Positions 1 through 64,000 of a stretch of DNA of 64,000 nt are shown one piece after another. Source of the stretch: Haplodiscus bocki. Its lineage: Eukaryota. Under the pieces are notes generated by a model. That model was not told the origin of the DNA, did not search any database, and was given only the letters and a program-made list of their open reading frames with translations. Numbering within the stretch: position 1 is the stretch's first letter; each line of letters begins with the position of its first letter. The translations under genes and the position numbers were made by a program. The stretch spans positions 127,224,001 to 127,288,000 of the forward strand of contig OZ296650.1 of the NCBI GenBank assembly GCA_965655095.1, read 5' to 3'.

Positions 1-3000
1 CGAATGGAATTTTTGCACGACCAGTTGAAAGCTCTGGATTGACAAGCTGATTGAAAAACCGCAAGTTGGTTGTTACGGAGGAACTTGAGTTTGGTTGTCG
101 ACAGAGTTTAATTTCTCTGAAAGACTAAAATTTCTGATTGCGAGTTCGATAGAAAAAATCAATCCTGTAGCTACGGTGAAACTAATGTTTGCAGAATGAA
201 ACCAATCAAAATTTGTAGCAGTTTTGGAAAATTCGAACTATCAGGAATCTGATGCAAAGATCCAATTCAAGGTTTTTAAAGTGAGTTTTCCTTCACAGAT
301 ATGAAACTTTCCCGTGAAACCTTGATAGAGGCAATCAATTCAGTAGTTACGGAGAAGTATGTGTTCTAATATCGAACAAGAAATCAAAAGTAAGAGCAAA
401 TTTTGCACAGATCGAACGATCTGGATGTTGATGCGAGTTTCACAAAAGTTTCCTGATTTGTATCTTCCTCTGAGAAAATGAAACTGTTGTTGTGGAATTT
501 GATGGATGGAACCAGTCCTGCAGTGGGAAGTAAATTTGAGTTTGAAATATGAGATATTTGTCAAATTTAGGAATAACGTTGGTAATTCTCTGATTATTAT
601 GGTTCAAATTGCAGCAACGAAACTGTCTCTTTTTGAATTCCTTGTTTACCACAGTCTGAACGTTTTTCAGTGGGACACGAGAGAAGGAGTCAAATAGTAG
701 TTGCGAAGAAACATGAGTCTGAGTGTCGAGAAATTTCGTCACCTATGGCCTTGCTTTGAGAATGGGACTATCAAGACTTCGCTGCTACACTCAAAACATT
801 TGTCTTTCAGTCGCATCTGCTTCTGGATGGTTGAAATTTTGATTCAAACTTGTAGGGAATTCTCCTGTTTGTAGTTACTTTGATATTTGAGTTTCAGGTT
901 TGAGATAAATCAAATAATTGTGTTTTTTTTCGGTTTCTGGACTATCGGTTTTCTTAGCAATTTTGAGAAACCGTTTCCTCAATTGAATCCTGCCCCGCAA
1001 GTGCAAAATTCTCGGTTGCGATCGTCATGAAGGACTCAACCGTGAATTTCCGAAGCAAAATTAGCATGGAAATTGAGATGAATCATTTTTATTACCACTC
1101 TTTGGTTTCTTTAGACCATCAGGAATCGGATGCACTGATCGGAATCGGAAACCTCTCCAGCAATTTACCTTCTTTAAAGTCAAGTTTTTCCAAGGAAGTT
1201 TTAGTAGATGCAACCAAACCTACAGTTGTAGAGAACTTTGGGTTTCAAAATCGAAATTTTTCAAATTCAAACACCAATTTTGTTTTACTCTGACATTCAG
1301 GATTTTGGTGTGGGGAACAAAAAAGTGCTTCCCCGGCACAATCTTTTTCTGCATTTGGGAATTTTTTGATCGTCATCTTCATTTAGGACATCAACACTGT
1401 TTTTGGAGCAAATTTGAACTTGACCGTCGAGGTAAATCAATATTAATAGCAGTTTTAAGAGTTTCCGGACAAGCAGGACTTTGATGCAAAGATAACATTC
1501 AACTATTTTCCATTGAGTATTGCCTTACACGTGTGCAAGTTTCTATTGAAGTCTTGATAGAAGCCATCAATTTGGCAGTTACGGCGGAAAGTTTGAATGT
1601 GTCGACAAATAGGAATTGAAAGCAGGTTTTGTATCTTTCCGACAATCAGGATTATGATACTTGTTTCAGAAAGATGTTTGCTTAATCGAATTTTCTTCTG
1701 CATGTGTAAAATGTTCGATTAGAACCGTGATGCAAGGAATCAAAGCTGTGGTCACGGAGGAAAATGAGCCTGATTTTTGAGATAATTACGTATTGAAAGC
1801 ACTTTCGGGAGCTTTCGGTCAATAAGGAGTTCGTTTGTATGGAGTCAAAACGAATGTTTCTTTCTGCCCATCTTACCTTTCAAACATGAAACTTTTCTTT
1901 GTGGTCTCCATGGAAGAGAACCATTCTTTAATTGCCTTGATATCTGGGTTTTGATATCTAGATGACATATAATTTTTGGCACTATTCGTGACTTTTGGAC
2001 ATTGAGGACTCGCATGCAAAAATTGAAGTTGAATGTTTTCCGAATGGAATTTTTGCACGACCAGTTGAAAGCTCTGGATTGACAAGCTGATTGAAAAACC
2101 GCAAGTTGGTTGTTACGGAGGAACTTGAGTTTGGTTGTCGACAGAGTTTAATTTCTCTGAAAGACTAAAATTTCTGATTGCGAGTTCGATAGAAAAAATC
2201 AATCCTGTAGCTACGGTGAAACTAATGTTTGCAGAATGAAACCAATCAAAATTTGTAGCAGTTTTGGAAAATTCGAACTATCAGGAATCTGATGCAAAGA
2301 TCCAATTCAAGGTTTTTAAAGTGAGTTTTCCTTCACAGATATGAAACTTTCCCGTGAAACCTTGATAGAGGCAATCAATTCAGTAGTTACGGAGAAGTAT
2401 GTGTTCTAATATCGAACAAGAAATCAAAAGTAAGAGCAAATTTTGCACAGTTCGAACGATCTGGATGTTGATGCGAGTTTCACAAAAGTTTCCTGATTTG
2501 TATCTTCCTCTGAGAAAATGAAACTGTTGCTGTGGAATTTGATGGATGGAACCAGTCCTGCAGTGGGAAGTAAATTTGAGTTTGAAATATGAGATATTTG
2601 TCAAATTTAGGAATAACGTTGGTAATTCTCTGATTATTATGGTTCAAATTGCAGCAACGAAACTGTCTCTTTTTGAATTCCTTGTTTACCACAGTCTGAA
2701 CGTTTTTCAGTGGGACACGAGAGAAGGAGTCAAATAGTAGTTGCGAAGAAACATGAGTCTGAGTGTCGAGAAATTTCGTCACCTATGGCCTTGCTTTGAG
2801 AATGGGACTATCAAGACTTCGCTGCTACACTCAAAACATTTGTCTTTCAGTCGCATCTGCTTCTGGATGGTTGAAATTTTGATTCAAACTTGTAGGGAAT
2901 TCTCCTGTTTGTAGTTACTTTGATATTTGAGTTTCAGGTTTGAGATAAATCAAATAATTGTGTTTTTTTTTGGTTTCTGGACTATCGGTTTTCTTAGCAA

Positions 3001-6000
3001 TTTTGAGAAACCGTTTCCTCAATTGAATCCTGCCCCGCAAGTGCAAAATTCTCGGTTGCGATCGTCATGAAGGACTCAACCGTGAATTTCCGAAGCAAAA
3101 TTAGCATGGAAATTGAGATGAATCATTTTTATTACCATTCTTTGGTTTCTTTAGACCATCAGGAATCGGATGCACTGATCGGAATCGGAAACCTCTCCAG
3201 CAATATACCTTCTTTAAAGTCAAATATTTCCAAGGAAGTTTTAGTAGATGCAACCAAACCTACAGTTGTAGAGAAATTTGGGTTTCAAAATCGAAATAAT
3301 TCAAATTCAAACACCAATTTTGTTTTACTCTGACATTGAGGATTTTGGTGTAGGGAACAAAAAAGTGCTTCCCCGGCACAATCTTTTTCTGCATTTGGGA
3401 ATTTTTTGATCGTCATCTTCCTTTAGGACATCAACATTGTATTTGGAGCAAATTTGAACTTGACCGTCGAGGTAAATCAATACTAATAGCAGTTTTAAGA
3501 GGTTTCGGACAAGCAGGACTTTGATGCAAAGATAACATTCAACTATTTTCCATTGAGTATTGCCTTACACGTGTGCAAGTTTCTATTGAAGTCTTGATAG
3601 AAGCCATCAATTTGGTAGTTACGGCGGAAAGTTTGAATGTGTCGACAAATAGAAATTAAAAGCAGGTTTTGTAATTTTCCGACAACCAGGTTTATGATAC
3701 TTGTTTCAGAAAGATGTTTGCCTAATCGAATTTGCTTCGAATTTGCTTCTGCATGTTTAAAATGTTCGATTAGAACCGTGATGCAAGGAATCAAAGCTGT
3801 GGTCACGGAGGAAAATGAGCCTGATTTTTGAGATAATTACGTATTGAAAGCATTTTCGGGAGCTTTCGGTCAATAAGGAGTTCGTTTGTATGGAGTCAAA
3901 ACGAATGTTTCTTTCTGCCCATCTTACCTTTCAAACATGAAACTTTTCTTTGTGATCTCCATGGAAGAGAAAAATTCTTTAATTGCCTTGATATCTGGGT
4001 TTTGATGTCGAGATGACATATAATTTTTGGCACTATTCGTGACTTTTGGACAATGAGGACTCGCATGCAAAAATTGAAGTCGAATGTTTTTCGAATGGAA
4101 TTTCTGCACGACCAGTTGAAAGCTCTGGATTGACAAGCTGATTAAAAAACCGCAATTTGGTTGTTACGGAGGAACTTGAGTTTGGTTGTCGACAGAGTTT
4201 AATTTCTCTGAAAGACTAAAATTTCTGATAGCGAGTTCGTTAGAAAAAATCAATCCTGTAGCTACGGTGAAACTAATGTTTGCAGAATGAAACCAATCAA
4301 AATTTGTAGCAGTTTTGGAAAATTCGAACTATCAGGAATCTGATGCAAAGATCCAATTCAAGGTTTTTAAAGTGAGTTTTCCTTCACAGATATGAAACTT
4401 TCCCGTGAAACCTTGATAGAGGCAATCAATTCAGTAGTTACGGAGAAGTATGTGTTCTAATCTCGAACAAGAAATCAAAAGTAAGAGCGAATTTTGCACG
4501 GTTCGAACGATCTGGATGTTGATGCGAGTTTCACAAAAGTTTCCTGATTTGTATCTTCCTCTGAGAAAATGAAACTGTTGCTGTGGAATTTGATGGATGC
4601 AACCAGTCCTGCAATAGGAAGTAAATTTGAGTTTGAAATATGAAATATTTGTCAAATTTAGGAATAACTTTCGTAATTCTCTGATTATTATGGTTCAAAT
4701 TGCAGCAACCAAACTGTCTTCTTTTTGATATCCTTGTTTACCACAGTCTGAACGTTTTTCAGTGGGACACGAGAGAAGGAGTCAAATATTAGTTGCGAAG
4801 AAACATGAGTCTGAATGTCGCGAAAATTCATCACCTATGGCCTTGCTTTGAGAATGGGACTATCAAGACTTCGCTGCTACACTCAAAATTTTTGTCTTTC
4901 AGTCGCATCTTCTTCTGGATGGTGGAATTTTTGATTCAAAGCTTACAGAAATTCTCTTGTCTGTGGCTACTTTGATATTTGAGTTTCAGGTTTGAGATAA
5001 ATCAATTAAATGTGTTTTTTTTGGTTTCTGGACTATCGGTTTTCTTAGCAGTTTTGAGAAACCGTTTCTTCAATTGAAACATGCTCCGCAAGTGCGAAAT
5101 TTTCGGTTGTGATTGTCATGAAGGACTCAACCGTGAATTTCCAAAGCAAAACTAGCATGGAAATTGAGCTGAATCGTTTTTATTACCTTTTTCTTGGTTT
5201 CTTCAGATCATAGAGAATCGGATGCACCGATCGGAATCGGAAACTTCTCCATCAATTTTGCTTCTTCAAAGTCAACTGTTCCCAAAGAAGTTTTATTAGG
5301 AGCAACTAAACCTAGAGTTACGGAGAAATTTGGGTTTCAAATTCGAAATAAATCAAATTCAGAAGCCAATTTTGTATTACTCAGACTTCAGGATTTTCGT
5401 GTAGGGAACAAAAAAGTGCTTCCCCGGCACAATCTTTTTCTGCATTTGGGAATTTTTTGAACGTCATCTTCCTTTAGGACATCAACACTGTATTTGGAGC
5501 AAATTTGAACTTGACCGTCGAGGTAAATCAATACTAATAGCAGTTTTAAGAGTTTTCGGACAAGCAGGACTTTGATGCAAAGATAACATTCAACTATTTT
5601 CCATTGAGTATTGCCTTACACGTGTGCAAGTTTCTATTGAAGTCTTGATAGAAGCCATCAATTTGGTAGTTACGGCGGAAAGTTTGAATGTGTCGACAAA
5701 TAGAAATTGAATGCAGGTTTTGTAATTTTCCGACAATCAGGATTATGATACTTGTTTCTGAAAGATGTTTGCTTAATCGAATTTGCTTCTGCATGTGTAA
5801 AATGTTCGATTAGAACCGTGATGCAAGGAATCAAAGCTGTGGTCACGGAGGAAAATGAGCCTGATTTTTGAGATAATTACGTATTGAAAGCATTTTCGGG
5901 AGCTTTCGGTCAATAAGGAGTTCGTTTGTATGGAGTCAAAACGAATGTTTCTTTCTGCCCATCTTACCTTTCAAACATGAAACTTTTCTTTGTGATCTCC

Positions 6001-9000
6001 ATGGAAGAGAACAATTCTTTAATTGCCTTGATATCTGGGTTTTGATTTCTAGATGAGATATAAATTTTGGCACTATTCGTGACTTTTGGACAATGAGGAA
6101 TCGCAGGCAAAAATTGAAGTCGAATGTTTTCCGAATGGAATTTTTGCACGACCAGTTGAAAGCTCTGGATTGACAAGCTGATTGAAAAACCGCAAGTTGG
6201 TTGTTACGGAGGAACTTGAGTTTGGTTGTCGACAGAGTTTAATTTCTCTGAAAGACTAAAATTTCTGATTGCGAGTTCGATAGAAAAAATCAATCCTGTT
6301 GCTACGGTGAAACTAATGTTTGCAGAATGAAACCAATCAAAATTTGTAGCAGTTTTGGAAAATTCGAACTATCAGGAATCTGATGCAAAGATCCAATTCA
6401 AGGTTTTTAAAGTGAGTTTTCCTTCACAGATATGAAACTTTCCCGTGAAAGCTTGATAGAGGCGATCAATTCAGTAGTTACGGAGAAGTATGTGTTCTAA
6501 TATCGAACAAGAAATCAAAGGTAAGAGCAAATTTTGCACAGTTCGAACGATCTGGATGTTGATGCGAGTTTCACAAAAGTTTCCTGATTTGTATCCTCCT
6601 CTGAGAAAATGAAACTGTTGCTGTGGAATTTGATGGATGGAACCAGTCCTGCAGTGGGAAGTAAATTTGAGTTTGAAATATGAGATATTTGTCAAATTTA
6701 GGAATAACGTTGGTAATTCTCTGATTATTATGGTTCAAATTGCAGCAACGAAACTGTCTCTTTTTGAATTCCATGTTTACCACAGTCTGAACGTTTTTCA
6801 GTGGGACACGAGAGAAGGAGTCAAATAGTAGTTGCGAAGAAACATGAGTCTGAGTGTCGAGAAAATTCGTCACCTATGGCCTTGCTTTGAGAATGGGACT
6901 ATCAAGACTTCGCTGCTACACTCAAAACATTTGTCTTTCAGTCGCATCTGCTTCTGGATGGTTGAAATTTTGATTCAAACTTGTAGGGAATTCTCCTGTT
7001 TGTAGTTACTTTGATATTTGAGTTTCAGGTTTGAGATAAATCAAATAATTGTGTTTTTTTTTGGTTTCTGGACTATCGGTTTTCTTAGCAATTTTGAGAA
7101 ACCGTTTCTTCAATTGAATCCTGCCCCGCAAGTGCGAAATTCTCGGTTGCGATCGTCATGAAGGACTCAACCGTGAATTTCCGAAGCAAATGTAGCATGG
7201 AAATTGAGATGAATCATTTTTATTACCACTCTTTGGTTTCTTTAGACCATCAGGAATCGGATGCACTGATCGGAATCGGAAACCTCTCCAGCAATTTACC
7301 TTTCTTTTGAAGTCAAGTTTTTCCAAGGAAGTTTTAGTAGATGCAACCAAACCTACAGTTGGAGAGAAATTTGGGTTTCAAAATCGAAATAATTCAAATT
7401 CAAACACCAATTTTGTTTTACTCTGACATTCAGGATTTTGGTGTGGGGAACAAAAAAGTGCTTCCCCGGCACAATCTTTTTCTGCATTTGGGAATTTTTT
7501 GATCGTCATCTTCATTTAGGACATCAACACTGTATTTGGAGCAAATTTGAACTTGACCGTCGAGGTAAATCAATATTAATAGCAATTTTAAGAGTTTCCG
7601 GACAAGCAGGACTTTGATGCAAAGATAACATTCAACTATTTTCCATTGAGTATTGCCTTACACGTGTGCAAGTTTCTATTGAAGTCTTGATAGAAGCCAT
7701 CAATTTGGCAGTTACGGCGGAAAGTTTGAATGTGTCGACAAATAGGAATTGAAAGCAGGTTTTGTAATTTACCGACAATCAGGATTATGATACTTGTTTC
7801 AGAAAGATGTTTGCTTAATCGAATTTTCTTCTGCATGTCTAAAATGTTCGATTAGAACCGTGATGCAAGGAATCAAAGCTGTGGTCACGGAGGAAAATGA
7901 GCCTGATTTTTGAGATAATTACCTATTGAAAGCACTTTCGGGAGCTTTCGGTCAATAAGGAGTTCGTTTGTATGGAGTCAAAACGAACGTTTCTTTCTGC
8001 CCATCTTACCTTTCAAACATGAAACTTTTCTTTGTGATCTCCATGGAAGAGAACCATTCTTTAATTGCCTTGATATCTGGGTTTTGATATCTAGATGACA
8101 TATAATTTTTGGCACTATTCGTGACTTTTGGACATTGAGGACTCGCATGCAAAAATTGAAGTCGAATGTTTTCCGAATGGAATTTTTGCACGACCAGTTG
8201 AAAGCTCTGGATTGACAAGCTGATTGAAAAACCGCAAGTTGGTTGTTACGGAGGAACTTGAGTTTGGTTGTCGACAGAGTTTAATTTCTCTGAAAGACTA
8301 AAATTTCTGATTGCGAGTTCGACAGAAAAAATCAATCCTGTAGCTACGGTGAAACTAATGTTTGCAGAATGAAACCAATCAAAAATTGTAGCAGTTTTGG
8401 AAAATTCGAACTATCAGGAATCTGATGCAAAGATCCAATTCAAGGTTTTTAAAGTGAGTTTTCCTTCACAGATATCAAACTTTCCCGTGAAACCTTGATA
8501 GAGGCAATCAATTCAGTAGTTACGGAGAAGTATGTGTTCTAATATCGAACAAGAAATCAAAAGTAAGAGCAAATTTTGAACAGTTCGAACCATCTGGATG
8601 TTGATGCGAGTTTCACAAAAGTTTCCTGATTTGTATCTTCCTCTGAGAAAATGAAACTGTTGCTGTGGAATTTGATGGATGGAACCAGTCCTGCAATAGG
8701 AAGTAAATTTGAGTTTGAAATATGAGATATTTGTCAAATTTAGGAATAACGTTGGTAATTCTCTGATTATTATGGTTCAAATTGCAGCAACGAAACTGTC
8801 TCTTTTTGAATTCCTTGTTTACCACAGTCTGAACGTTTTTCAGTTGGACACGAGAGAAGGAGTCAAATAGTAGTTGCGAAGAAACTTGAGTCTGAGTGTC
8901 GAGAAAATTCGTCACCTATGGCCTTGCTTTGAGAATGGGACTATCAAGACTTCGCTGCTACACTCAAAACATTTGTCTTTCAGTCGCATCTGCTTCTGGA

Positions 9001-12000
9001 TGGTTGAAATTTTGATTCAAACTTGTAGGGAATTCTCCTGTCTGTGGTTACTTTGATATTTGAGTTTCAAGTTTGAGATAAATCAAATAATTGTGTTTTT
9101 TTTTTGGTTTCTGGGCTATCGGTTCTCTTAGCAATTTTGAGAAACCGTTTCCTCAATTGAATCCTGCCCCGCAAGTGCAAAATTCTCGGTTGCGATCGTC
9201 ATGAAGGACTCAACCGTGAATTTCCGAAGCAAATGTAGCATGGAAATTGAGATGAATCGTTTTTATTACCACTCTTTGGTTTCTTTAGACCATCAGGAAT
9301 CGGATGCACTGATCGGAATCGGAAACCTCTCCAGCAATTTACCTTCTTTAAAGTCAAATATTTCCAAGGAAGTTTTAGTAGATGCAACCAAACCTACAGT
9401 TGTAGAGAAATTTGGGTTTCAAAATCGAAATAATTCAAATTCAAACACCAATTTTGTTTTACTCTGACATTGAGGATTTTGGTGTAGGGAACAAAAAAGT
9501 GCTTCCCCGGCACAATCTTTTTCTGCATTTGGGAATTTTTTGATCGTCATCTTCCTTTAGGACATCAACATTGTATTTGGAGCAAATTTGAACTTGACCG
9601 TCGAGGAAAATCAATACTAATAGCAGTTTTAAGAGGTTTCGGACAAGCAGGATTTTGATGCAAAGATAACATTCAACTATTTTCCATTGAGTATTGCCTT
9701 ACACGTGTGCAAGTTTCTATTGAATTCTTGATAGAAGCCATCAATTTGGTAGTTACGGCGGAAAGTTTGAATGTGTCGACAAATAGAAATTGAAAGCAGG
9801 TTTTGTAATTTTCCGACAATCAGGATTATGATACTTGTTTCAGAAAGATGTTTGCTTAATCGAATTTGCTTCTGCATGTGTAAATTGTTCGATTAGAACC
9901 GTGATGCAAGGAATCAAAGCTGTGGTCACGGAGGAAATCGAGCCTGATTTTTGAGATAATTACGTATTGAAAGCATTTTCGGGAGGGTTCGGTCAATAAG
10001 GAGTTCGTTTGTATGGAGTCAAAACGAATGTTTCTTTCTGCCCATCTTACCTTTCAAACATGAAACTTTTCTTTGTGATCTCCATGGAAGAGAACAATTC
10101 TTCAATTGCCCTGATATCTGGGTTTTGATTTCTAGATGAGATATAATTTTTGGCACTATTCGTGACTTTTTGACAATGAGGACTCGCATGCAAAAATTGA
10201 AGTCGAATGTTTTCCGAATGGATTTTTTGCACGACCAGTTGAAAGCTCTGGATTGACAAGCTGATTGAAAAACCGCAAGTTGGTTGTTACGGAGGAACTT
10301 GAGTTTGGTTGTCGACAGAGTTTAATTTCTCTGAAAGACTAAAATTTCTGATTGCGAGTTCGATAGAAAAAATCAATCCTGTAGCTACGGTGAAACTAAT
10401 GTTTGCAGAATGATACCAATCAAAATTTGTAGCAGTTTTGGAAATTTCGAACTATCAGGAATCTGATGCAAAGATCCAATTCAAGGTTTTTAAAGTGAGT
10501 TTTTCTTTACAGATATGAAACTTCTCCGTGAAACATTGATAGAAGCAATCAATTCAGTAGTTACGGAGAAGTTTGTGTTCTAATATCGAACAAGAAATCA
10601 AAAGTAAGAGCAAATTTTGCACAGTTCGAACGATCTGGATGTTGATGCGAGTTTCACAAAACTTTCCTGATTTGCATCTTCCTCTGAGAAAATGAAACTG
10701 TTGCTGTGGAATTTGATGGATGGAACCAGTCCTGCAGTGGGAAGTAACATTGAGTTTGAAATATGAGATATTTGTCAAATTTAGGAATAACGTTGGTAAT
10801 TCTCTGATTATTATGGTTCAAATTGCAGCAACGAAACTGTCTTCTTTTTGAATTCCTTGTTTACCACAATCTGAACGTTTTTCAGTGAAACATGACAGAA
10901 GGAGTCAAATAGTAGTTGCGAAGAAACATGAGTCTGAGTGTCGAAAAAAATTCGTCACATATGGCCTTGCTTTGAGAATGGGACTATCAAGACTTCGCTG
11001 CTACACTCAAAACTTTTGCCTTTCAGTCGCATCTTCTTCTGGATGGTGGAATTTTTGATTCAAACTTGTAGGGAATTCTCCTGTTTGTAGTTACTTTGAT
11101 ATTTGAGTTTCAGGTTTGAGATAAATCAAATAATTGTGTTTTTTTTTGGTTTCTGGACTATCAGTTTTCTTAGCAATTTTGAGAAACCGTTTCTTCAATT
11201 GAATCCTGCCCCGCAAGTGCGAAATTCTCGGTTGCGATCGTCATGAAGGACTCAACCGTGAATTTCCGAAGCAACTGTAGCATGGAAGTTGAGATGAATC
11301 ATTTTTATTACCACTCTTTGGTTTCTTTAGACCATCAGGAATCGGATGCACTGATCGGAATCGGAAACCTCTCCAGCAATTTACCTTTCTTTTGAAGTCA
11401 AGTTTTTCCAAGGAAGTTTTAGTAGATGCAACCAAACCTACAGTTGGAGAGAAATTTGGGTTTCAAAATCGAAATAATTCAAATTCAAACACCAATTTTG
11501 TTTTACTCTGACATTCAGGATTTTGGTGTGGGGAACAAAAAAGTGCTTCCCGGCACAATCTTTTTCTGCAACTGGGACTGTTTCGATCGTCATCTTCATT
11601 TAAGAGACCAACACTGTAGTTGGAGCAAATTTAAACTTGACCGTCGAGGTAAATCAATACTAATAGCAGTAGTAAGAGGTTTCGGACAAGCAGGACTTTG
11701 ATGCAAAGATAACATTCAACTATTTTCCATTGAGTATTGCCTTACACGTGTGCAAGTTTCTATTGAAGTCTTGATAGAAGCCATCAATTTGGTAGTTACG
11801 GCGGAAAGTATGAATGTGTCGACAAATAGAAATTGAAAGCAAGTTTTGTAATTTTCCGACAATCAGGATTTTGATACTTGTTTCAGAAAGATGTTTGCTT
11901 AATCGAATTTGCTTCTGCATGTGTAAAATGTTCGATTAAAACCGTGATGCAAGGAATCAAAGCTGTGGTCACGGAGGAAAATGAGCCTGATTTTTGAGAT

Positions 12001-15000: not shown

Positions 15001-18000
15001 AAATATTAGTTGCGAAGAAACATGAGTCTGAATGTCGCGAAAATTCATCACCTATGGCCTTGCTTTGAGAATGGGACTATCAAGACTTCGCTGCTACACT
15101 CAAAACTTTTGTCTTTCAGTCGCAACTTCTTCTGGATGGTGGAATTTTTGATTCAAAGCTTACAGAAATTCTCTTGTCTGTAGCTACTTTGATATTTGAG
15201 TTTCAGGTTTGAGATAAATCAATTAAATATGTTTTTTTTTGGTTTCTGGACTATCGGTTTTCTTAGCAGTTTTGAGAAACCGTTTCTCCAATTGAAACCT
15301 GCTCCGCAGGTGCGAATTTTTCGGTTGTGATTGTCATGAAGGACTCAACCGTGAATTTCCAAAGCAAAACTAGCATGGAAATTGAGCTGAATCGTTTTTA
15401 TTACCACTTCTTGGTTTCTTCAGATCATAGAAAATCGGATGCACCGATCGGAATCGGAAACTTCTCCATCAATTTTGCTTCTTCAAAGTCAACTGTTCCC
15501 AAAGAAGTTTTAGTAGGAGCAACTAAACCTAGAGTTACAGAGAAATTTGGGTTTCAAATTCGAAATAAATCAAATTCAAAAGCCAATTTTGTATTACTCA
15601 GACTTCAGGATTCTCGTGTAGGGAACAAAAAAGTGCTTCCCCGGCACAATCTTTTTCTGCATTTGGGAATTTTTTGAACGTCATCTTCCTTTAGGACATC
15701 AACATTGTATTTGGAGCAAATTTAAACTTGACCGTCGAGGTAAATCAATACTAATAGCAGTTTTAAGAGGTTTCGGACAAGCAGGACTTTGATGCAAAGA
15801 TAACATTCAACTATTTTCCATTGAGTATTGCCTTACACGTGTGCAAGTTTCTATTGAAGTCTTGATAGAAGCCATCAATTTGGTAGTTACGGCGGAAAGT
15901 TTGAATGTGTCGGCAAATAGAAATTAAAAGCAGGTTTTGTAATTTTCCGACAATCAGGATTATGATACTTGTTTCAGAAAGATGTTTGCTTAATCGAATT
16001 TGCTTCGAATTTGCTTCTGCATGTGTAAAATGTTCGATTAGAACCGTGATGCAAGGAATCAAAGCTGTGGTCACGGAGGAAAATGAGCCTGATTTTTGAG
16101 ATACTTACGTATTGAAAGCATTTTCGGGAGCTTTCGGTCAATCAGGAGTTCGTTTGTATGGAGTCAAAACGAATGTTTCTTTCTGCCCATCTTACCTTTC
16201 AAACATGAAACTTTTCTGTGTGATCTCCATGGAAGAGAACAATTCTTTAATTGCCTTGATATCTGGGTTTTGATATTGAGATGACATATAATTTTTGGCA
16301 CTATTCGTGACTTTTGGACAATGAAGACTCGCATGTAAAAATTGAAGTCGAATGTTTTCCGAATGGAATTTCTGCACGACCAGTTGAAAGCTGTGGATTG
16401 ACAAGCTGATTGAAAAACCGCAAGTTGGTTGTTACGGAGGAACTTGAGTTTGGTTGTCGACAGAGTTTAATTTCTCTGAAAGACTAAAATTTCTGATTGC
16501 GAGTTCGTTAGAAAAAATCAATCCTGTAGCTACGGTGAAATTAATGTTTGCAGAATGAAACCAATCAAAATTTGTAGCAGTTTTGGAAAATTCGAACTAT
16601 CAGGAATCTGATGCAAAGATCCAATTCAAGGTTTTTAAAGTGAGTTTTCCTTCACAGATATGAAACTTTCCCGTGAAACCTTGATAGAGGCAATCAATTC
16701 AGTAGTTACGGAGAAGTATGTGTTCTAATATCGAACAAGAAATCAAAAGTAAGAGCAAATTTTGCACAGTTCGAACGATCTGGATGTTGATGCGAGTTTC
16801 ACAAAAGTTTCCTGATTTGTATCTTCCTCTGAGAAAATGAAACTGTTGCTGTGGAATTTGATGGATGCAACCAGTCCTGCAATAGGAAGTAAATTTGAGT
16901 TTGAAATATGAGATATTTGTCAAGTTTAGGAATAACTTTCGTAATTCTCTGATTATTATGGTTCAAATTGCAGCAACCTAACTGTCTTCTTTTTGAATTC
17001 CTTGTTTACCACAGTCTGAACGTTTTTCAGTGGGACACGAGAGAAGGAGTCAAATATTAGTTGCGAAGAAACATGAGTCTGAATGTCGCGAAAATTCATC
17101 ACCTATGGCCTTGCTTTGAGAATGGGACTATCAAGACTTCGCTGCTACACTCAAAACTTTTGTCTTTCAGTCGCAACTTCTTCTGGATGGTGGAATTTTT
17201 GATTCAAAGCTTACAGAAATTCTCTTGTCTGTAGCTACTTTGATATTTGAGTTTCAGGTTTGAGATAAATCAATTAAATATGTTTTTTTTTGGTTTCTGG
17301 ACTATCGGTTTTCTTAGCAGTTTTGAGAAACCGTTTCTCCAATTGAAACCTGCTCCGCAGGTGCGAATTTTTCGGTTGTGATTGTCATGAAGGACTCAAC
17401 CGTGAATTTCCAAAGCAAAACTAGCATGGAAATTGAGCTGAATCGTTTTTATTACCACTTCTTGGTTTCTTCAGATCATAGAAAATCGGATGCACCGATC
17501 GGAATCGGAAACTTCTCCATCAATTTTGCTTCTTCAAAGTCAACTGTTCCCAAAGAAGTTTTAGTAGGAGCAACTAAACCTAGAGTTACAGAGAAATTTG
17601 GGTTTCAAATTCGAAATAAATCAAATTCAAAAGCCAATTTTGTATTACTCAGACTTCAGGATTCTCGTGTAGGGAACAAAAAAGTGCTTCCCCGGCACAA
17701 TCTTTTTCTGCATTTGGGAATTTTTTGAACGTCATCTTCCTTTAGGACATCAACATTGTATTTGGAGCAAATTTAAACTTGACCGTCGAGGTAAATCAAT
17801 ACTAATAGCAGTTTTAAGAGGTTTCGGACAAGCAGGACTTTGATGCAAAGATAACATTCAACTATTTTCCATTGAGTATTGCCTTACACGTGTGCAAGTT
17901 TCTATTGAAGTCTTGATAGAAGCCATCAATTTGGTAGTTACGGCGGAAAGTTTGAATGTGTCGACAAATAGAAATTGAAAGCAAGTTTTGTAATTTTCCG

Positions 18001-21000
18001 ACAATCAGGATTTTGATACTTGTTTCAGAAAGATGTTTGCTTAATCGAATTTGCTTCTGCATGTGTAAAATGTTCGATTAAAACCGTGATGCAAGGAATC
18101 AAAGCTGTGGTCACGGAGGAAAATGAGCCTGATTTTTGAGATAATTACGTATTGAAAGCATTTTCGGGAGCTTTCGGTCAATCAGGAGTTCGTTTGTATG
18201 GAGTCAAAACGAATGTTTCTTTCTGCCCATCTTACCTTTCAAACATGAAACTTTTCTGTGTGATCTCCATGGAAGAGAACAATTCTTTAATTGCCTTGAT
18301 ATCTGGGTTTTGATATTGAGATGACATATAATTTTTGGCACTATTCGTGACTTTTGGACAATGAAGACTCGCATGCAAAAATTGAAGTCGAATGTTTTCC
18401 GAATGGAATTTCTGCACGACCAGTTGAAAGCTGTGGATTGACAAGCTGATTGAAAAACCGCAAGTTGGTTGTTACGGAGGAGCTTGAGTTTGGTTGTCGA
18501 CAGAGTTTAATTTCTCTGAAAGACTAAAATTTCTGATTGCGAGTTCGTTAGAAAAAATCAATCCTGTAGCTACGGTGAAACTAATGTTTGCAGAATGAAA
18601 CCAATCAAAATTTGTAGCAGTTTTGGAAAATTCGAACTATCAGGAATCTGATGCAAAGATCCAATTCAAGGTTTTTAAAGTGAGTTTTCCTTCACAGATA
18701 TGAAATTTTCCCGTGAAACCTTGATAGAGGCAATCAATTCAGTAGTTACGGAGAAGTATGTGTTCTAATATCGAACAAGAAATCAAAAGTAAGAGCAAAT
18801 TTTGCACAGTTCGAACGATCTGGATGTTGATGCGAGTTTCACAAAAGTTTCCTGATTTGTATCTTCCTCTGAGAAAATGAAACTGTTGCTGTGGAATTTG
18901 ATGGATGCAACCAGTCCTGCAATAGGAAGTAAATTTGAGTTTGAAATATGAGATATTTGTCAAGTTTAGGAATAACTTTCGTAATTCTCTGATTATTATG
19001 GTTCAAATTGCAGCAACCTAACTGTCTTCTTTTTGAATTCCTTGTTTACCAGAGTCTGAACGTTTTTCAGTGGGACACGAGAGAAGGAGTCAAATATTAG
19101 TTGCGAAGAAACATGAGTCTGAATGTCGCAAAAATTCATCACCTATGGCCTTGCTTTGAGAATGGGACTATCAAGACTTCGCTGCTACACTCAAAACTTT
19201 TGTCTTTCAGTCGCAACTTCTTCTGGATGGTGGAATTTTTGATTCAAAGCTTACAGAAATTCTCTTGTCTGTAGCTACTTTGATATTTGAGTTTCAGGTT
19301 TGAGATAAATCAATTAAATATGTTTTTTTTTGGTTTCTGGACTATCGGTTTTCTTAGCAGTTTTGAGAAACCGTTTCTCCAATTGAAACCTGCTCCGCAG
19401 GTGCGAATTTTTCGGTTGTGATTGTCATGAAGGACTCAACCGTGAATTTCCAAAGCAAAACTAGCATGGAAATTGAGCTGAATCGTTTTTATTACCACTT
19501 CTTGGTTTCTTCAGATCATAGAAAATCGGATGCACCGATCGGAATCGGAAACTTCTCCATCAATTTTGCTTCTTCAAAGTCAACTGTTCCCAAAGAAGTT
19601 TTAGTAGGAGCAACTAAACCTAGAGTTACAGAGAAATTTGGGTTTCAAATTCGAAAAAAATCAAATTCAAAAGCCAATTTTGTATTACTCAGACTTCAGG
19701 ATTCTCGTGTAGGGAACAAAAAAGTGCTTCCCCGGCACAATCTTTTTCTGCATTTGGGAATTTTTTGATCGTCATCTTCCTTTAGGACATCAACACTGTA
19801 TTTGGAGCAAATTTGAACTTGACCGTCGAGGTAAATCAATACTAATAGCAGTTTTAAGAGTTTTCGGACAAGCAGGACTTTGATGCAAAGATAACATTCA
19901 ACTATTTTCCATTGAGTACTGCCTTACACGTGTGCAAGTTTCTATTGAAGTCTTGATAGAAGCCATCAATTTGGTAGTTACGGCGGAAAGTATGGATGTG
20001 TCGACAAATAGAAATTGAAAGCAAGTTTTGTAATTTTCCGACAATCAGGATTTTGATACTTGTTTCAGAAAGATGTTTGCTTAATCGAATTTGCTTCTGC
20101 ATGTGTAAAATGTTCGATTAAAACCGTGATGCAAGGAATCAAAGCTGTGGTCACGGAGGAAAATGAGCCTGATTTTTGAGATAATTACGTATTGAAAGCA
20201 TTTTCGGGAGCTTTCGGTCAATAAGGAGTTCGTTTGTATGGAGTCAAAACGAATGTTTCTTTCTGCCCATCTTACCTTTCAAACATGAAACTTTTCTTTG
20301 TGATCTCCATGGAAGAGAACAATTCTTTAATTGCCTTGATATCTGGGTTTTGATATCGAGATGACATATAATTTTTGGCACTATTCGTGACTTTTGGACA
20401 ATGAGGACTCGCATGCAAAAATTGAAGTCGAATGTTTTCCGAATGGAATTTTTGCACGACCAATTGAAAGCTCTGGATTGACAAGCTGATTGAAAAACCG
20501 CAAGTTGATTGTTACGGAGGAACTTGAGTTTGGTTGTCGACAGAGTTTAATTTCTCTGAAAGACTAAAATTTCTGATTGCGAGTTCGTTAGAAAAAATCA
20601 ATCCTGTAGCTACGGTGAAACTAATGTTTGCAGAATGAAACCAATCAAAATTTGTAGCAGTTTTGGAAAATTCGAACTATCAGGAATCTGATGCAAAGAT
20701 CCAATTCAAGGTTTTTAAAGTGAGTTTTCCTTCACAGATATGAAACTTTCCCGTGAAACCTTGATAGAGGCAATCAATTCAGTAGTTACGGAGAAGTATG
20801 TGTTCTAATATCGAACAAGAAATCAAAAGTAAGAGCAAATTTTGCACAGTTCGAACGATCTGGATGTTGATGCGAGTTTCACAAAAGTTTCCTGATTTGT
20901 ATCTTCCTCTGAGAAAATGAAACTGTTGCTGTGGAATTTGATGGATGGAACCAGTCCTGCAGTGGGAAGTAAATTTGAGTTTGAAATATGAGATATTTGT

Positions 21001-24000
21001 CAAATTTAGGAATAACGTTGGTAATTCTCTGATTATTATGGTTCAAATTGCAGCAACGAAACTGTTTTCTTTTTGAATTCCTTGTTTACCACAATCTGAA
21101 CGTTTTTCAGTGAAACATGACAGAAGGAGTCAAATAGTAGTTGCGAAGAAACATGAGTCTGAGTGTCGAGAAAATTCGTCACCTATGGCCTTGCTTTGAG
21201 AATGGGACTATCAAGACTTCGGTGCTACACTCAAAACTTTTGCCTTTCAGTCGCATCTTCTTCTGGATGGTGGAATTTTTGATTCAAAGCTTACAGAAAT
21301 TCTCTTGTCTGTAGCTACTTTGATATTTGAGTTTCAGGTTTGAGATAAATCAATTAAATGTGTTTTTTTTTGGTTTCTGGACTATCGGTTTTCTTAGCAG
21401 TTTTGAGAAACCGTTTCTTCAATTGAAATCTGCTCCGCAAGTGCGAAATTTTCGGTTGTGATTGTCATGAAGGACTCAACCGTGAATTTCCAAAGCAAAA
21501 CTAGCATGGAAATTGAGCTGAATCGTTTTTATTACCACTTCCTGGTTTCTTCAGACCATAGAGAATCGGATGCACCGATCGGAATCGGAAACTTCTCCAT
21601 CAATTTTCCTTCTTCAAAGTCAACTGTTCCCAAAGAAGTTTTATTAGGAGCAACTAAACCTAGAGTTACAGAGAAATTTGGGTTTCAAATTCGAAATAAT
21701 TCAAAGTCAAAAGCCAATTTTGTATTACTCTGACCTTCTGGATTTTGGTGTAGGGAACAAAAAATGGCTTCCTCGGCACAATCCTCTTCTGCAACTGGGA
21801 ACATTTTGATTGTCATCTTTATTTAAGAGATCAACACTGTACTTGGAGCAATTTTGAACTTGACCGTCGAGGTAAATCAATACTAATAGCAGTATTAAGG
21901 GTTTTCGGACAAGAAGGATTTTGATGCAAAGATAACATTCAATTGTTTTCCATTGAGTTTTTCCTTACACGTGTGACAGTTTCTATTGAAGTGTTGATGG
22001 AAGCCATCAAACGGGTGTTTACGGTGGAAAGTTCGATTGTGTAGATAAAAAAAAACTAAAAGGAGGTATTGTATTTTTCCGGCAATCAGGATTATGATAC
22101 AAGTTTCAGAAAGATGTTTGCTTAATCGAATTTTCTTCTGCATGTGTAAAATGTTCCATTGGAACCGCGACGCAAGGAATCAAAGCTGTGGTCGCGGAGA
22201 AAAATGAGCTTGGTTTTCGAGATAATTACATAATGAAAACACTTTCGCGCGTTTTACGTCATTCAGGAATTCGTTTGTTTGGAGTCAAAGTGAAAGTTTC
22301 TTTCTGCCAATCTTACTTTTCAAATATGAAACTTTTCTTTGTGATCTCGATGGAAGAGAACAATTCTTCAATTGCCTTGATTTTTGGGTTTTGATGCCAA
22401 GATGACATAAAGTTCTTGGCAATGTTTTTGAATTTTGGACAATGAGGACTCACATGCAAAAATTGAAGTCGAAAGTTCTCCGAATGGAAAAGTTGCCCGA
22501 CCAGTTGAAAGCTCTGGATTGACAAGCTGATTGAAAAACAGCGAGCTGGTTGTTACGGAGGAACTTGAGTTTGGTTGTCGAGAGAGTTGGTTTAATTTCT
22601 CTGAAAGAATAAAATTTCTGATCGCGAACTCGATAGAAAAATCAATCCTGTAGCTACGGTGAAACTAAAGTTTAAAGAAAGAAAGCAATCAATACTAGTA
22701 GCAATTTTGGAAAATTCGAACTATCAGGATTCTGATGCAAAGATCCAATTCAAGGTTTTTAAAGTGAGTTTTTCTTTACAGATATGAAACTTCTCCGTGA
22801 AACCTTGATAGAAGCAATCAATTCGGTAGTTACGGAGAAATATTTGTTCTAATATCGAAAAAAGTTCAAAAGTAAAAGCAAGTTTTGCACAATTTGAACG
22901 ATCTGGCTGTTGATGGGAGTTTCACAAAAGTTTCTTGATTTGTATCCTCTTCTGAAAATGTGATACTGTTGCTGTGGAATTTGATGGATGGAATCAGCCC
23001 TGCAGTAGGAAAGAAATTTGAGTTTGAAAATTGAGATGTAAATCAATTTTAGGAAAACCTTTCGTATTTCTCTGATTATTAAAGTTCAAATTGCAGCAAC
23101 GAAACTAATTTCTTTTTGAATCCCTTGTTTACCACAATCTGAACTTTTTTCAGGGAAACATGACAGAAGGAGTCAAATAAGTAGTTGAGAAGAAACAAGA
23201 GTCTGAATGTCGAGAAATTCCATCACCTATGGCCTTGCTTTGAAAATGGGACTATCAAGACTTCGCTGCTACAATCAAAACTTTTGTCTTTCAGTCGCAT
23301 CTTCTTCTGGATGGTTGAAATTTTGATTCAAATTTTAAGGAAATTCTCTTGTCTCTATTGACTGTGATGTTTGAGTTTCAGGTTTGAGATAAATCAAAGA
23401 AATGTGTTTTTTTTTGGTTTCTGGACTATCGGTTTTCTTAGCAATTTTGAGAAACCGTTTCCCCAACTGAATATTGCTCCGCAAGTGTGAAACTCTCGGT
23501 TGTCATCTTCATGAAAGACTCAACCGTGAAGTTTCGAAACAAAATTAACATGGAAATTGAGATGAATCAATTTTATTACCACTTTTTGGTTTCTTCAGAC
23601 CATCAGGAGTTTGACGCACTGATCGGAATCGGAAACCTCTGCAGCATTTTACCCTCTTCAAAGTCAACTGTTCCCAAAGAAAATTTAGTAGAAGCTTTCA
23701 AACTTACAGTTACAGAGGAATTAGGGTTTAAAATCGAAATAGTCCAAATTTAAAAGCCAATTTTGTATTACTCTGACAGTCAGGAGTTTGGTGTAGGGAA
23801 CAAAAAATGCTTCCCGGCACAATCTTTTTCTGCAACTGGGACTGTTTCGATCGTCATCTTCATTTAAGAGACCAACACTGTAGTTGGAGCAAATTTGAAC
23901 TTGACCGTCGAGGTAAATCGATACTAATAGCAGTAGTAAGAGTTTTCGGACAAGCAGGACTTTGATGCAAAGATAACATTCAACTATTTTCCACTAAGTT

Positions 24001-24720
24001 TTTCCTTACAGGTGTGGAACTTTCTATTGAAGTCTTGATAGAAGCCATCAAACTGGTAGTTACGTCGGAAAGTTAGAATGTGCAGATAAATAGACATTAA
24101 AAGCAGGTTTTTTTTGCGGACAATCATGATTATGTTGCAAGTTTCAAAAAGATGTTTGATCAATTGAATCTTCCTCTGCATATGTAAAATGTTCGATTAG
24201 AACCATGATGCAAGCAATCAGAGAAGCGGTCACGGAGGAAAATGAGCTTGGTTTTTGAGATAAAGAAATAATAAAAGCAGTTTGGCGAGTTTTACGTCAA
24301 TCACGAATTCTTTTGTATGGATTCAAATTGAAAGTTTCTCTCCGCCTATCTTACCTTTCAAATATGAAACTTTTTTTGTGATCTCGATGGAAGAGAACAA
24401 TTCTTTATTTGCCCTGATTTCTGGGTTTTGATATTGAGATGACATGTAATTCTTGGAACGTTTTGTGAATTTTGGACAATGAGGACTCACATGCAAAGAT
24501 TGAAGTCGAAATGTTCCAAATGGAAAAACGACCCGACCAGTTGAAATCTCTGGATTGACTAGTTGATTGAAAAACAGCAAGTTGGTTGTTACGAAGGAAC
24601 TTGAGTTTGGTTGTCGAGAGAGTTTAATTTCTATCAAAGAATAAAATTTCTGATTGCGAGTTCGATAGAAAGAATCAAGAATAATATTTCTGGTCGAGAG
24701 TTCGATAGAAAGAATCAATC
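1..24720. repeat. Tandem satellite array, ~12 copies of a 2040-2051 bp higher-order repeat unit built from ~175-bp monomers; open at window start
   Basis: The marker CGAATGGAATTTTTGCACGACC or a close variant recurs at 1, 2041, 4092, 6132, 8174, 10215, 12258, 14309, 16360, 18400 and 20440, with diverged copies at ~22481 and ~24520. The ORF track repeats with the same period. Confidence 0.97.
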
Positions 24721-27700: not shown

Positions 27701-28640
27701 TGAAGTCTATGGTTGTGACTTTGATGAAAGAAAGCATATCTTCTATTACGGAGAAACACGAGTTTGAATAGCGAGGCAAACCAAAACCAGCATTTTCCTG
27801 ATTCTTAGATTATTTTTGCTCTTTTTGTTTCAAATTTCTGAAGCAAGGAGCGAAAAAGACCCCATTTAAATCAACTAGTTTGCCAAAAATCGAATCTTTT
27901 GAGCCATTAATGCAAAAAAGTAAGCCTGTGATTATGGGGAAAAATGAATTTGATTCTTGGGTTTGAGTGCCGAAAGCAAAAATAGCACTTTTTGGAAAGT
28001 TCGGTCAATTAAGAATTCGACGGAGCGCACACAAATGACAACTTTTCCTTCAAGTTGTTGCCACCAGCTGACAGCTTTGATTTGGATCTTGATGAAAGAA
28101 ACGGAAGCTGTTGTTATGGAAAAACAAGAGTTTAAAGACTGACGCCAAAGAATAAAAGTAACAATTGTTTAAAATCACTGACTGAAATCAAGAACTCTGA
28201 TGCAAGTAGTCAAATCACTGAAGTATCACGCAAACGGTTTGACAAATGTTGAAAAATGAATTCAAAACTTGATGGAAGTGATTAATATGGTGGTCACAAA
28301 GAATTATGTGTTTAAATGTCAAGTCAACCAAACAGTAAAGCCTTTTTCGGACCATCAATTTTTTGATGCAAGTATCAAATTAAAAAGTTGTTTAACCGAA
28401 TCCGCCATCCCGAGTGATTTTTCTTCCGGTTGAGAACCTAATGGAGGGAATCAATCCTTTAGTTGCGCAGATATAATGTTTTGAACGTTGAAGTAAATTA
28501 TTTATCACGGCTGCCTTCTAGAATATTCGCACTCTCCGAACTTCGATACAAACAATATGAAAAACTTTCAGTCAAATCTTTCTCTACAAAGTTGAAAAGT
28601 TCTGTGCCTAGTTATTCACGCATAAACCTGGAAACCAATA
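24720..28640. repeat. Diverged monomeric ~175-bp satellite, same family as the HOR monomers
   Basis: A GACTATCAGGATTCTGATGCAA-like anchor recurs at ~25133, 25306, 25484, 25658, 25827, 25991, 26143, 26314, 26493, 26668, 26846, 27021, 27289, 27463, 27635, 27828, 28002, 28185, 28349 and 28531, without the 2-kb register. Confidence 0.85.
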
Positions 28641-35442: not shown

Positions 35443-35650
35443 AATGTATTAAGATAGGGTATAGTTTCGGCAATAGATAGGGTATAGTTTCGGCAATGTA
35501 TTAAGATAGGGTATAGTTTCGGCAATGTATTAAGATAGGGTATAGTTTCGGCAATGTGTTATGATTGGTTCGTATTAAGATAGGACGGCAATGCATTAAG
35601 ATAGCGTAATGTATAAGGATATGTCTTGCAATGGAATAGGGTATTTTTGG
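35443..35650 (+). repeat. 29-bp tandem repeats (AATGTATTAAGATAGGGTATAGTTTCGGC) in the left TIR, mirrored at ~52630-52865
   Basis: Three perfect copies, one 23-bp shortened copy and further degenerate copies. Confidence 0.9.
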
Positions 35651-58304: not shown

Positions 58305-58504
58305 ACATAATTCGTGAAAGTATACAATTACTTTGAATTAGAAATAAAATTGAATTTATAAGATTTCTTTTTATTAGATAGTACTCTATCATGATATCTC
58401 ACATTTCGTTGTCCACGTAAAATATATTTTTTAGATTTAACATTATTTTTAACATATCTAGTCTTTTCAAATGATTCTTTTACTTTTACAACCATTTAAT
58501 AGCA

Positions 58505-62364: not shown

Positions 62365-62417
62365 TTTCGCGTCTCTTTTTATATAGGATAAAATTTTGAA
62401 ATGATTTATCTGAGATC

Positions 62418-63990: not shown

Positions 63991-64000
63991 TTCATTTCTA

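What the first reader, a model, noticed from the sequence alone, without database searches (positions are those of the whole stretch)
1..24720. The 2-kb tandem unit is a hidden 12-mer higher-order repeat of a ~175-bp monomer
Seen: within unit 1 a GACTATCAGGAATCTGATGCAA-like anchor sits at ~123, 237, 416, 592, 766, 940, 1114, 1292, 1468, 1641, 1818, 1998 and 2163. The spacings (114,179,176,174,174,174,178,176,173,177,180,165) sum to 2040. Monomers are strongly diverged from each other while whole units differ by only a few percent. Known: this is the HOR organisation of primate alpha satellite, and nucleosome-sized monomers are typical of centromeric satellites. Inference: a candidate centromeric or pericentromeric HOR satellite in a non-model invertebrate.
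Basis: partly seen in the sequence, partly recalled or inferred. Interest (0 to 1): 0.75.

Follow-up and report, generated by a model that had tools for sequence, protein, structure and literature searches.

The report
Transposon-related 12-monomer higher-order satellite array
The 2-kb tandem repeat really is built from twelve old, diverged ~176-bp monomers. The same monomer family is scattered genome-wide inside thousands of Helitron-type mobile elements, and the array is small and single-locus, so it is a known kind of transposon-linked satellite and probably not a centromere.

Summary
Observation confirmed, with corrections. The window holds 12 full 2,040-bp units plus a truncated 13th (1-24791). 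The array starts about 16 kb upstream of the window, giving about 20 units (41 kb) plus one detached copy. Each unit consists of 12 monomers of about 176 bp that are only 35-66% alike, while units are 84-100% alike. Every monomer is recognised by a profile built from the other 11 (26-72 bits; shuffles reach at most 8.3). The HOR lies inside a 54-kb one-strand monomer domain with diverged monomeric flanks, old edges and a young core.

The centromere interpretation is not supported:
- The HOR exists at one 41-kb locus, at 94% of a 135-Mb chromosome.
- The monomer family is dispersed, with roughly 10^5 monomers genome-wide.
- In all 26 other loci examined it forms short arrays; in the 18 examined with wide flanks, nearly all are bracketed by conserved arms with the architecture of Helentron non-autonomous elements (HINEs). 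At least 4,282 arm motifs occur genome-wide.
- Hit spacing suggests other HOR-like arrays, including a second one on the same chromosome.

This is a new member of a known kind (satellites tied to Helitron/Helentron cargo). CENP-A data are lacking. Earlier scan notes had already flagged the edge gradient here.

The parts
1..24515 (+). Twelve full HOR units (U08-U19 of the whole array) of 2,035-2,051 bp. Core units are 94-100% alike, the last two 91-93% and 87%.
   Evidence: BLAST of unit 1; unit identity matrix
237..415 (+). Monomer m1 of unit 1 (179 bp). The next monomers start at 416, 592, 767, 940, 1115, 1293, 1469, 1642 and 1820.
   Evidence: Seed and leave-one-out profiles; MAFFT alignment of the 12 monomers
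1999..2162 (+). Monomer m11, truncated at its 3' end (lacks about 18 alignment columns).
   Evidence: Alignment; profile hit on model positions 1-154
2163..2276 (+). Monomer m12 (114 bp), lacking about the first 67 columns. Together with m11 it marks the single phase break per unit, a deletion of about 85 bp inside the amplified block.
   Evidence: Alignment. Nineteen spacings of about 100-105 bp recur once per unit.
24516..24791 (+). Truncated last unit (unit positions 1-234) containing a 40-bp internal duplication at 24637-24716. It ends exactly at the m12 end, in monomer register.
24792..28506 (+). Right monomeric flank: about 21 head-to-tail, mutually diverged ~176-bp monomers of the same family, with no HOR.
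   Evidence: Monomer profile hits at 15-67 bits, all on the + strand; anchor family D1

Best explanation
This is a non-coding higher-order-repeat satellite.

Structure. A block of twelve already-diverged ~176-bp monomers, one junction of which carries an ~85-bp deletion, was amplified as a 2,040-bp unit to about 20 copies. The amplification took place inside a 54-kb, single-orientation domain of the same monomer family.

Mechanism (inferred). The seam between units and both outer edges of the array lie on monomer boundaries. The most likely process is therefore in-register unequal exchange between monomers twelve positions apart, followed by repeated unequal exchange or gene conversion between 2-kb units. 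That would keep the centre young (94-100% identity, with nested 3-unit block duplications) and leave the edges old (84-87%).

Origin of the monomers. The monomer family is not specific to this locus. It is the cargo of a high-copy, Helentron-type non-autonomous rolling-circle element (HINE) that has spread arrays of 3-16 monomers over all chromosomes. The window's arm-less domain is a standalone expansion of that repeat library. Whether the transposon seeded the domain or captured its repeats from such an array is unresolved; I favour seeding, about 60:40.

Shown versus inferred. Shown: the anatomy, the dispersal and the element architecture. Inferred: the exchange mechanism, the direction of origin and the absence of cellular function (I expect selfish or neutral DNA, possibly heterochromatic).
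For: Units and monomers.

Whole array and 54-kb domain, all + strand, 314 monomer hits.

Edges and seam in monomer register, and the phase break present in every unit.

Nested history (old edges; U01-03 = U04-06 at 98-99%; young core with two subtypes).

No ORF longer than 131 aa and no Rfam family.

Single-locus HOR versus dispersed monomer-like hits.

All 26 other loci examined are short arrays of 3-16 monomers.

Shared arms with sharp ends, bracketing nearly all arrays, giving elements of 2.2-3.6 kb.

Element architecture: subTIR match 9-12 of 14, a palindrome with 6/6 stem pairs in some copies, no TSD. The palindrome folds better than shuffles in 2 of 3 copies.

Dispersed arrays are colinear with one another over 0.8-1.6 kb at 70-80%, so blocks of diverged monomers are inherited as units.

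Census: monomer 20-mer 28,871 hits versus 130 for the control; arm motif 4,282 versus 0.

Helitron Rep domain: at least 147 matches, some in open frames up to 2,780 aa.

The literature describes this HINE architecture and the expansion of Helitron/Helentron internal arrays into satellites found both inside and outside elements (PMC7492417, PMC12628747, PMC10048060).
Against: No HINE arm remnants lie at or inside the C3 domain, even at E <= 10.

The HOR unit is not colinear with any of the 17 sampled HINE arrays.

HOR monomers are no closer to HINE-borne monomers than to each other. A direct descent of this domain from a HINE insertion is therefore not demonstrated.

The inverted repeat at the left-flank terminus does not fold better than shuffles.

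No autonomous partner was linked to the family.

Unequal exchange cannot be told apart from rolling-circle or extrachromosomal-circle amplification on sequence alone.

The other HOR-like arrays are known only from hit spacing; their sequence could not be fetched.
Confidence: 0.78

Rival explanations
1. The array is the centromeric or pericentromeric HOR satellite of chromosome C3. A homogenised HOR core flanked by diverged monomers and transposons would bind CENP-A.
For: The layered structure (young core, old edges, monomeric flanks, then a LINE on the left and a Polinton on the right) resembles primate centromere layering. Monomers are nucleosome-sized. The position, 8 Mb from a chromosome end, would fit an acrocentric chromosome.
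Against: The HOR is only 41 kb (54 kb with flanks) on a 135-Mb chromosome, and it is found at this locus alone. The monomer family is dispersed in thousands of short TE-borne arrays on all chromosomes. Hit spacing indicates another regular array of at least 34 kb on the same chromosome at 48.4 Mb, and others on C1 and C2. Edge-old, centre-young gradients arise in any tandem array that undergoes unequal exchange. Unchecked earlier notes report many unrelated 40-120-kb satellites in this genome.
Confidence: 0.06
2. The direction of origin is reversed. A pre-existing ~176-bp satellite (domains such as this one) is primary, and a Helentron captured a block of its monomers and merely dispersed them. 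The C3 domain would then be an ancestral source array and not an expansion of transposon cargo.
For: The domain has no arms at its edges. Its monomers are as diverged from each other as from HINE monomers, consistent with great age. Helitrons are known to capture host sequences, including tandem repeats (PMC12628747).
Against: HINE copies differ by 20-30% from one another, so the element family is itself old. No HINE array is colinear with any part of the HOR unit. The literature favours expansion from internal arrays, although both directions are discussed.
Confidence: 0.3
3. The 2-kb units are whole HINE elements tandemised by rolling-circle read-through (failure to terminate at the 3' end), not a HOR of monomers.
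For: Helitron-type elements are known to form tandem arrays with 3'-truncated inner copies (PMC7492417 introduction). The unit length of 2.04 kb is close to the element size of 2.2-3.6 kb.
Against: Profiles of both arms find nothing between -40 kb and +64 kb, nor at relaxed thresholds at the edges and gaps. The whole 2,040 bp is accounted for by 12 monomers.
Confidence: 0.02
4. The array is an assembly artefact (mis-expanded or collapsed repeat), or a tandem array of functional RNA or protein genes.
For: Satellites are error-prone in assemblies.
Against: The units differ in structured, nested ways that errors would not produce. Contigs from two samples cover the unit at >= 95% identity. There is no Rfam match and no ORF longer than 131 aa.
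Confidence: 0.03

Closest known systems
Cg_HINE: Helentron non-autonomous elements carrying satDNA-like arrays in the Pacific oyster, and standalone arrays of the same repeats (PMC7492417; reviews PMC10048060 and PMC12628747)
   Same: The dispersed copies have two conserved flanks with ~12-bp subterminal inverted repeats, a palindrome after the subTIR at one end, a central array of ~140-180-bp monomers in fixed orientation, no TSD and dense dispersal on all chromosomes. The same repeat type also occurs outside elements as longer arrays.
   Different: Arrays here are longer (3-16 monomers, against an oyster average of 3-5 and maximum of 29). Monomers within an array are far more diverged from each other. 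The standalone array has evolved a 12-mer HOR with about 20 units, which the papers I read do not describe for HINE-type repeats. There is no sequence comparison with the oyster elements, and no autonomous partner was identified.
Primate alpha-satellite HOR arrays
   Same: Monomers of about 171-176 bp; a unit of n diverged monomers amplified in register; units much more alike than monomers; a homogenised core with older, diverged or monomeric layers at the flanks.
   Different: The scale is about 41 kb, not megabases. There is one locus only, not one array per chromosome. The monomer family is dispersed and transposon-borne. No CENP-A or CENP-B-box evidence exists. One monomer junction carries an ~85-bp deletion.
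DINE-1/DINE-TR1 Helentron derivatives of Drosophila whose central tandem repeats expanded into satellite arrays (from my own knowledge; cited within PMC7492417 and PMC12628747)
   Same: Central tandem repeats of a non-autonomous Helentron serve as the seed or library for longer satellite arrays.
   Different: Different host and monomer. HOR formation was not part of what I could read. The comparison rests on the reviews, not on sequence.
Tyba holocentromere repeats of Rhynchospora (172 bp, 20-25-kb arrays, some linked to a Helitron; PMC10048060)
   Same: Monomers of about 172-176 bp; many short arrays spread along chromosome arms; an association with a Helitron-type element.
   Different: Tyba arrays bind CenH3 and are homogeneous. 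Here no centromere protein data exist, most arrays are about 2 kb, the monomers are highly diverged, and holocentricity of the host is unknown.

Membership tests
Higher-order-repeat (HOR) satellite | Tandem head-to-tail units with high unit-to-unit identity | tested here: met
   About 20 units of 2,034-2,051 bp at 84-100% identity
Higher-order-repeat (HOR) satellite | Each unit is a whole number of monomers of one family that are much more diverged from each other than the units are | tested here: met
   12 monomers at 35-66% pairwise identity. Leave-one-out scores are 26-72 bits against a shuffle maximum of 8.3. One junction carries an ~85-bp deletion.
Higher-order-repeat (HOR) satellite | The seam between units and the array edges lie in monomer register | tested here: met
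   Left edge at projected monomer start -16066; right edge at 24790/24791; the m12-to-m1 seam is in register
Centromeric satellite | CENP-A/CenH3 occupancy | not testable with these tools
   No chromatin data. No RNA or ChIP runs were listed.
Centromeric satellite | One dominant array per chromosome, not a dispersed distribution | tested here: not met
   The HOR is at one locus only. The monomer motif has 28,871 dispersed hits and the arm motif 4,282. A second regular array on C3 is indicated by hit spacing.
Centromeric satellite | Array size commensurate with a regional centromere (hundreds of kb to Mb in most animals with satellite centromeres) | tested here: not met
   41-kb HOR within a 54-kb domain, bounded on both sides inside the contig
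HINE / Helentron non-autonomous element (applies to the dispersed copies) | Subterminal inverted repeats of about 11-12 bp in both flanks | tested here: met
   An 11-nt core is shared between one terminus and the subterminal site next to the palindrome. The match is 9-12 of 14 in six copies with both ends.
HINE / Helentron non-autonomous element (applies to the dispersed copies) | [quoted passage not shown] | tested here: met
   A 6-bp stem with a 3-nt loop, with 6/6 pairs in some copies. It folds at z -2.4 and -3.9 in 2 of 3 copies.
HINE / Helentron non-autonomous element (applies to the dispersed copies) | Complementary inverted repeat next to the subTIR in the left flank | tested here: inconclusive
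   An imperfect AT-rich inverted pair is visible in the alignment, but it folds no better than shuffles (z -0.2 to -0.6).
HINE / Helentron non-autonomous element (applies to the dispersed copies) | Central array of satDNA-like repeats of about 140-180 bp, in fixed orientation between the flanks | tested here: met
   Arrays of 3-16 monomers of ~176 bp, with arm5 immediately before and arm3 immediately after in nearly all of the 18 loci examined with wide flanks
HINE / Helentron non-autonomous element (applies to the dispersed copies) | No target-site duplication; insertion at T-rich (TT) sites | tested here: inconclusive
   No TSD in six complete copies. A T abuts each end in 4 of 6 copies. The empty-site test was not possible.
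HINE / Helentron non-autonomous element (applies to the dispersed copies) | An autonomous Helentron (Rep/helicase plus endonuclease) sharing the termini | not tested
HINE / Helentron non-autonomous element (applies to the window's own array) | Array bracketed by the element's two flanks | tested here: not met
   No arm hits from -40 kb to +64 kb, nor at E <= 10 at the edges. The window's domain is a standalone array, not an element.

The most novel reading that the evidence does not exclude
The HINE-dispersed ~176-bp arrays, and their local HOR expansions such as this one, might act as centromere units. Either this layered 54-kb domain is a small regional centromere of C3, or the genome has repeat-based dispersed (holo- or poly-centric) centromeres seeded by a Helentron, an animal parallel to the Helitron-linked Tyba arrays of Rhynchospora.
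Probability: 0.05. Interest if true: 0.85.

Novelty: new member of a known kind. Interest (0 to 1): 0.4.

Why it matters
It gives a clean, fully bounded example of how a satellite matures: a library of diverged monomers spread by a rolling-circle transposon, a standalone monomeric domain, and then a young 12-mer HOR with nested block duplications and old edges, all readable in one 54-kb locus. Hit spacing suggests that several independent HORs of different period arose from the same library, which would make this genome a useful system for studying recurrent HOR birth outside centromeres. It also warns against reading 'HOR plus nucleosome-sized monomer' as a centromere signature in non-model genomes.

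Tried and rejected
- TRF (periods up to 500) did not find the 175-bp period; profile methods were needed.
- My first null test, using out-of-phase segments, was flawed because the segments overlapped the same monomers. I replaced it with leave-one-out profiles scored against dinucleotide shuffles.
- Coding or RNA-gene array: rejected.
- Tandem whole-element array: rejected, since no arms are present.
- tRNA-derived SINE reading of the dispersed element: a T-arm-like motif in the long arm was not confirmed by ARAGORN or Rfam, and there is no poly(A) tail or TSD. Dropped.
- Phase break as the seam of an out-of-register duplication: rejected, because the array edges and the seam are in register and the break lies inside the block.
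- Organism identity: the run labels are coded and the earlier notes disagree (coral versus acoel). Left open.
I did not seek the letters by another tool.
- A fuzzy-regex search for the termini timed out and was replaced by profile searches.
- Read laying gave only short contigs. None bridges the unit junction by the tool's criterion, and the depth cannot be calibrated.
Full report
**1. Observation**

Position 2041 restarts position 1. BLAST of the first 2,040 bp finds 12 full copies in the window plus a partial one at 24516-24791, at 87-98% identity to unit 1, falling towards the right edge.

Autocorrelation over 1-24720 peaks at 2040/2051 and 4091. Within a single unit it peaks at 173-177, 351-354, 525-530, 703-704 and 878 bp (z about 4-5). 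TRF missed it because the monomers are below its similarity range.

A profile seeded from only two monomers already finds others in phase at E 1e-7 to 1e-12 (iteration 0). In a leave-one-out design, each of the 12 monomers scores 26-72 bits against a profile of the other 11, while 500 dinucleotide shuffles reach at most 8.3 bits. Mean pairwise monomer identity in the alignment is 49% (range 35-66%).

The anchor at 123/2163 is not a homologous start. m11 lacks about 18 terminal columns and m12 about the first 67. The unit is therefore a 12-mer with one deletion of about 85 bp, which explains the odd 165 and 114 spacings.

**2. Extent and anatomy**

The window is G000:C3:127224001-127288000, on a contig of 135,245,774 bp. 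Upstream sequence shows that the main array runs from window coordinate -16063 to 24791, about 20 units. One detached copy at 83% identity lies at -22381 to about -20500.

The monomer profile finds 314 hits, all on the + strand, from -25268 to 28506. That makes a 54-kb domain in which the HOR is flanked on the right by about 21 diverged monomers (24832-28506). On the left there is a more complex monomeric block that contains its own duplication of about 4.6 kb.

The unit-by-unit identity matrix shows a layered history:
- The edge copies are 84% (left) and 87% and 91-93% (right) identical to the rest.
- A three-unit block is duplicated: U01-02-03 matches U04-05-06 pairwise at 98-99%, while the members within a block differ by about 11%.
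- The core, U07-U17, is 94-100% identical and has two interleaved subtypes.

Both outer edges of the HOR and the unit-to-unit seam fall on monomer boundaries. The m11/m12 phase break recurs once in every unit. So the break pre-dates the amplification, and the amplified block was cut in register.

There is no ORF above 131 aa and no Rfam family.

**3. Genome-wide picture**

The full 2-kb unit matches only this locus. Monomer-like matches at 66-78% identity lie on many chromosomes.

All 8 loci returned, and 18 more fetched with wider flanks, are short head-to-tail arrays of 3-16 monomers, 0.8-2.9 kb long. Their flanks are homologous to one another. One side has an arm of about 109 bp and the other an arm of about 560-590 bp. 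Both arms end sharply, and the DNA beyond them is unrelated between copies. In the 18 loci with wide flanks, the arms bracket nearly every array, giving elements of 2.2-3.6 kb.

Read in the orientation opposite to the array, the element has this layout:
- It begins with a terminal sequence whose inverted complement lies subterminally at the other end (an 11-nt shared core; 9-12 of 14 positions in six complete copies).
- That subterminal site is followed by a 6-bp-stem palindrome and a short tail.
- No target-site duplication is seen.

The palindrome folds better than shuffles in 2 of 3 copies (z -2.4 and -3.9). The AT-rich inverted pair at the other terminus does not.

This is the architecture given for Helentron non-autonomous elements (HINEs): subTIRs in both flanks, a 3' palindrome after the right subTIR, a central array of 140-180-bp repeats and T-rich insertion sites (PMC7492417).

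A 23-nt arm motif with up to 3 mismatches occurs 4,282 times, against 0 for the reversed control. A 20-nt monomer motif occurs 28,871 times, against 130. That motif catches only about 25-35% of known monomers, which implies roughly 10^5 monomers, about 1% of the genome. Helitron Rep domains are present at 147 or more places, some in open frames of up to 2,780 aa. I could not link any of them to this family.

**4. Relation between the HOR and the elements**

Dispersed arrays are colinear with each other over 0.8-1.6 kb at 70-80% identity. Blocks of mutually diverged monomers are therefore inherited as units in the element family as well.

The HOR unit is colinear with none of the 17 sampled arrays. 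Its monomers are about as far from HINE-borne monomers as from one another or from the flank monomers (means 0.51-0.54; best matches 0.57-0.71).

No arm remnant exists anywhere from -40 kb to +64 kb, nor at relaxed thresholds at the domain edges. The C3 domain is thus a standalone array of the same repeat library. Reviews describe the same array types both inside and outside Helitron/Helentron elements, and the expansion of internal arrays into satellites (PMC12628747; PMC10048060). The direction here (element seeded the array, or element captured from an array) is not resolved.

**5. Centromere question**

Several points count against a centromere role:
- The size is 41-54 kb.
- The HOR is present at a single locus.
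- The monomer family is dispersed.
- Exact motif hits with regular spacing suggest other arrays: C2:64.466-64.490 Mb (about 1,408 bp, which is 8 x 176), C3:48.374-48.408 Mb (about 2,486 bp, then about 1,100 bp with a six-unit super-period) and C1:184.54 Mb (2,598 bp). These are known from coordinates only.
- Unchecked earlier notes list many unrelated 40-120-kb satellites in this genome.

The points in favour are the layered structure and the subterminal position, which fit a centromere but are not specific to one. I put the centromere reading at about 5-6%.

**6. Independent reads**

Four runs from one study hold the unit. The organism name is coded. Short contigs from two samples cover the unit at 95% identity or more. 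None bridges the 2040/2041 junction by the tool's criterion, and the depth cannot be calibrated. This is weak support that the sequence is real and multi-copy, and nothing more.

**7. Verdict**

The hidden 12-mer HOR is real and well supported. It is best read as a locally amplified, in-register HOR within a standalone domain of a Helentron-dispersed ~176-bp repeat family. That makes it a new member of a known kind, of moderate interest as a compact, fully bounded example of satellite and HOR birth.

Noticed in passing
G000:C2:64466293-64490297; G000:C3:48374038-48408048; G000:C1:184541745-184546941: Exact hits of the monomer 20-mer are regularly spaced: about 1,408 bp; about 2,486 then about 1,100 bp with a six-unit super-period; and 2,598 bp. 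This suggests other, independent HOR-like arrays of the same family, including a second one on C3. They are known from coordinates only.
   Followed up: partly
window -25159..-22764 and -20507..-18124 (upstream of the window; loci L013/L016): The left monomeric flank contains a duplicated block of about 4.6 kb with identical profile scores in both copies. The detached HOR copy (Ud) is 99% identical to the first unit of the main array (U00).
   Followed up: partly
window 35443-35565 and 52714-52865: 29-bp tandem repeats in inverted orientation at the two ends of a segment of about 17.5 kb that is rich in ORFs.
   Followed up: no
window 58000-64000: G+C drops abruptly to 23-25% with negative GC skew, against 36-40% elsewhere in the window.
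   Followed up: no
window 54601-54823 and 56137-56279: Two arrays of 31-32-bp repeats built on a GGCGTTAACGGCGTT core.
   Followed up: no
G000:C3:133.75-134.31 Mb (also C9:18.6-19.0 Mb, C1:134.8-135.0 Mb, C23): Clusters of Helitron_like_N matches inside open frames of 1,800-2,780 aa, spaced about 15 kb apart. They look like tandemly repeated large Helitron-type genes or elements.
   Followed up: no
L032:836-3548 and L032:6113-8962: Two copies of one HINE about 5.3 kb apart with identical profile scores, which suggests a recent local segmental duplication that includes the element.
   Followed up: no
L016:5376-7123 (about 33-35 kb upstream of the window start): A LINE-type fragment (endonuclease and reverse transcriptase) to the left of the satellite domain.
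   Followed up: no
long arm of the dispersed element, e.g. L031:6817-7393: A conserved stretch resembling a tRNA T-arm (GGATTCGAACC on the array strand). Neither ARAGORN nor Rfam calls a tRNA there.
   Followed up: yes
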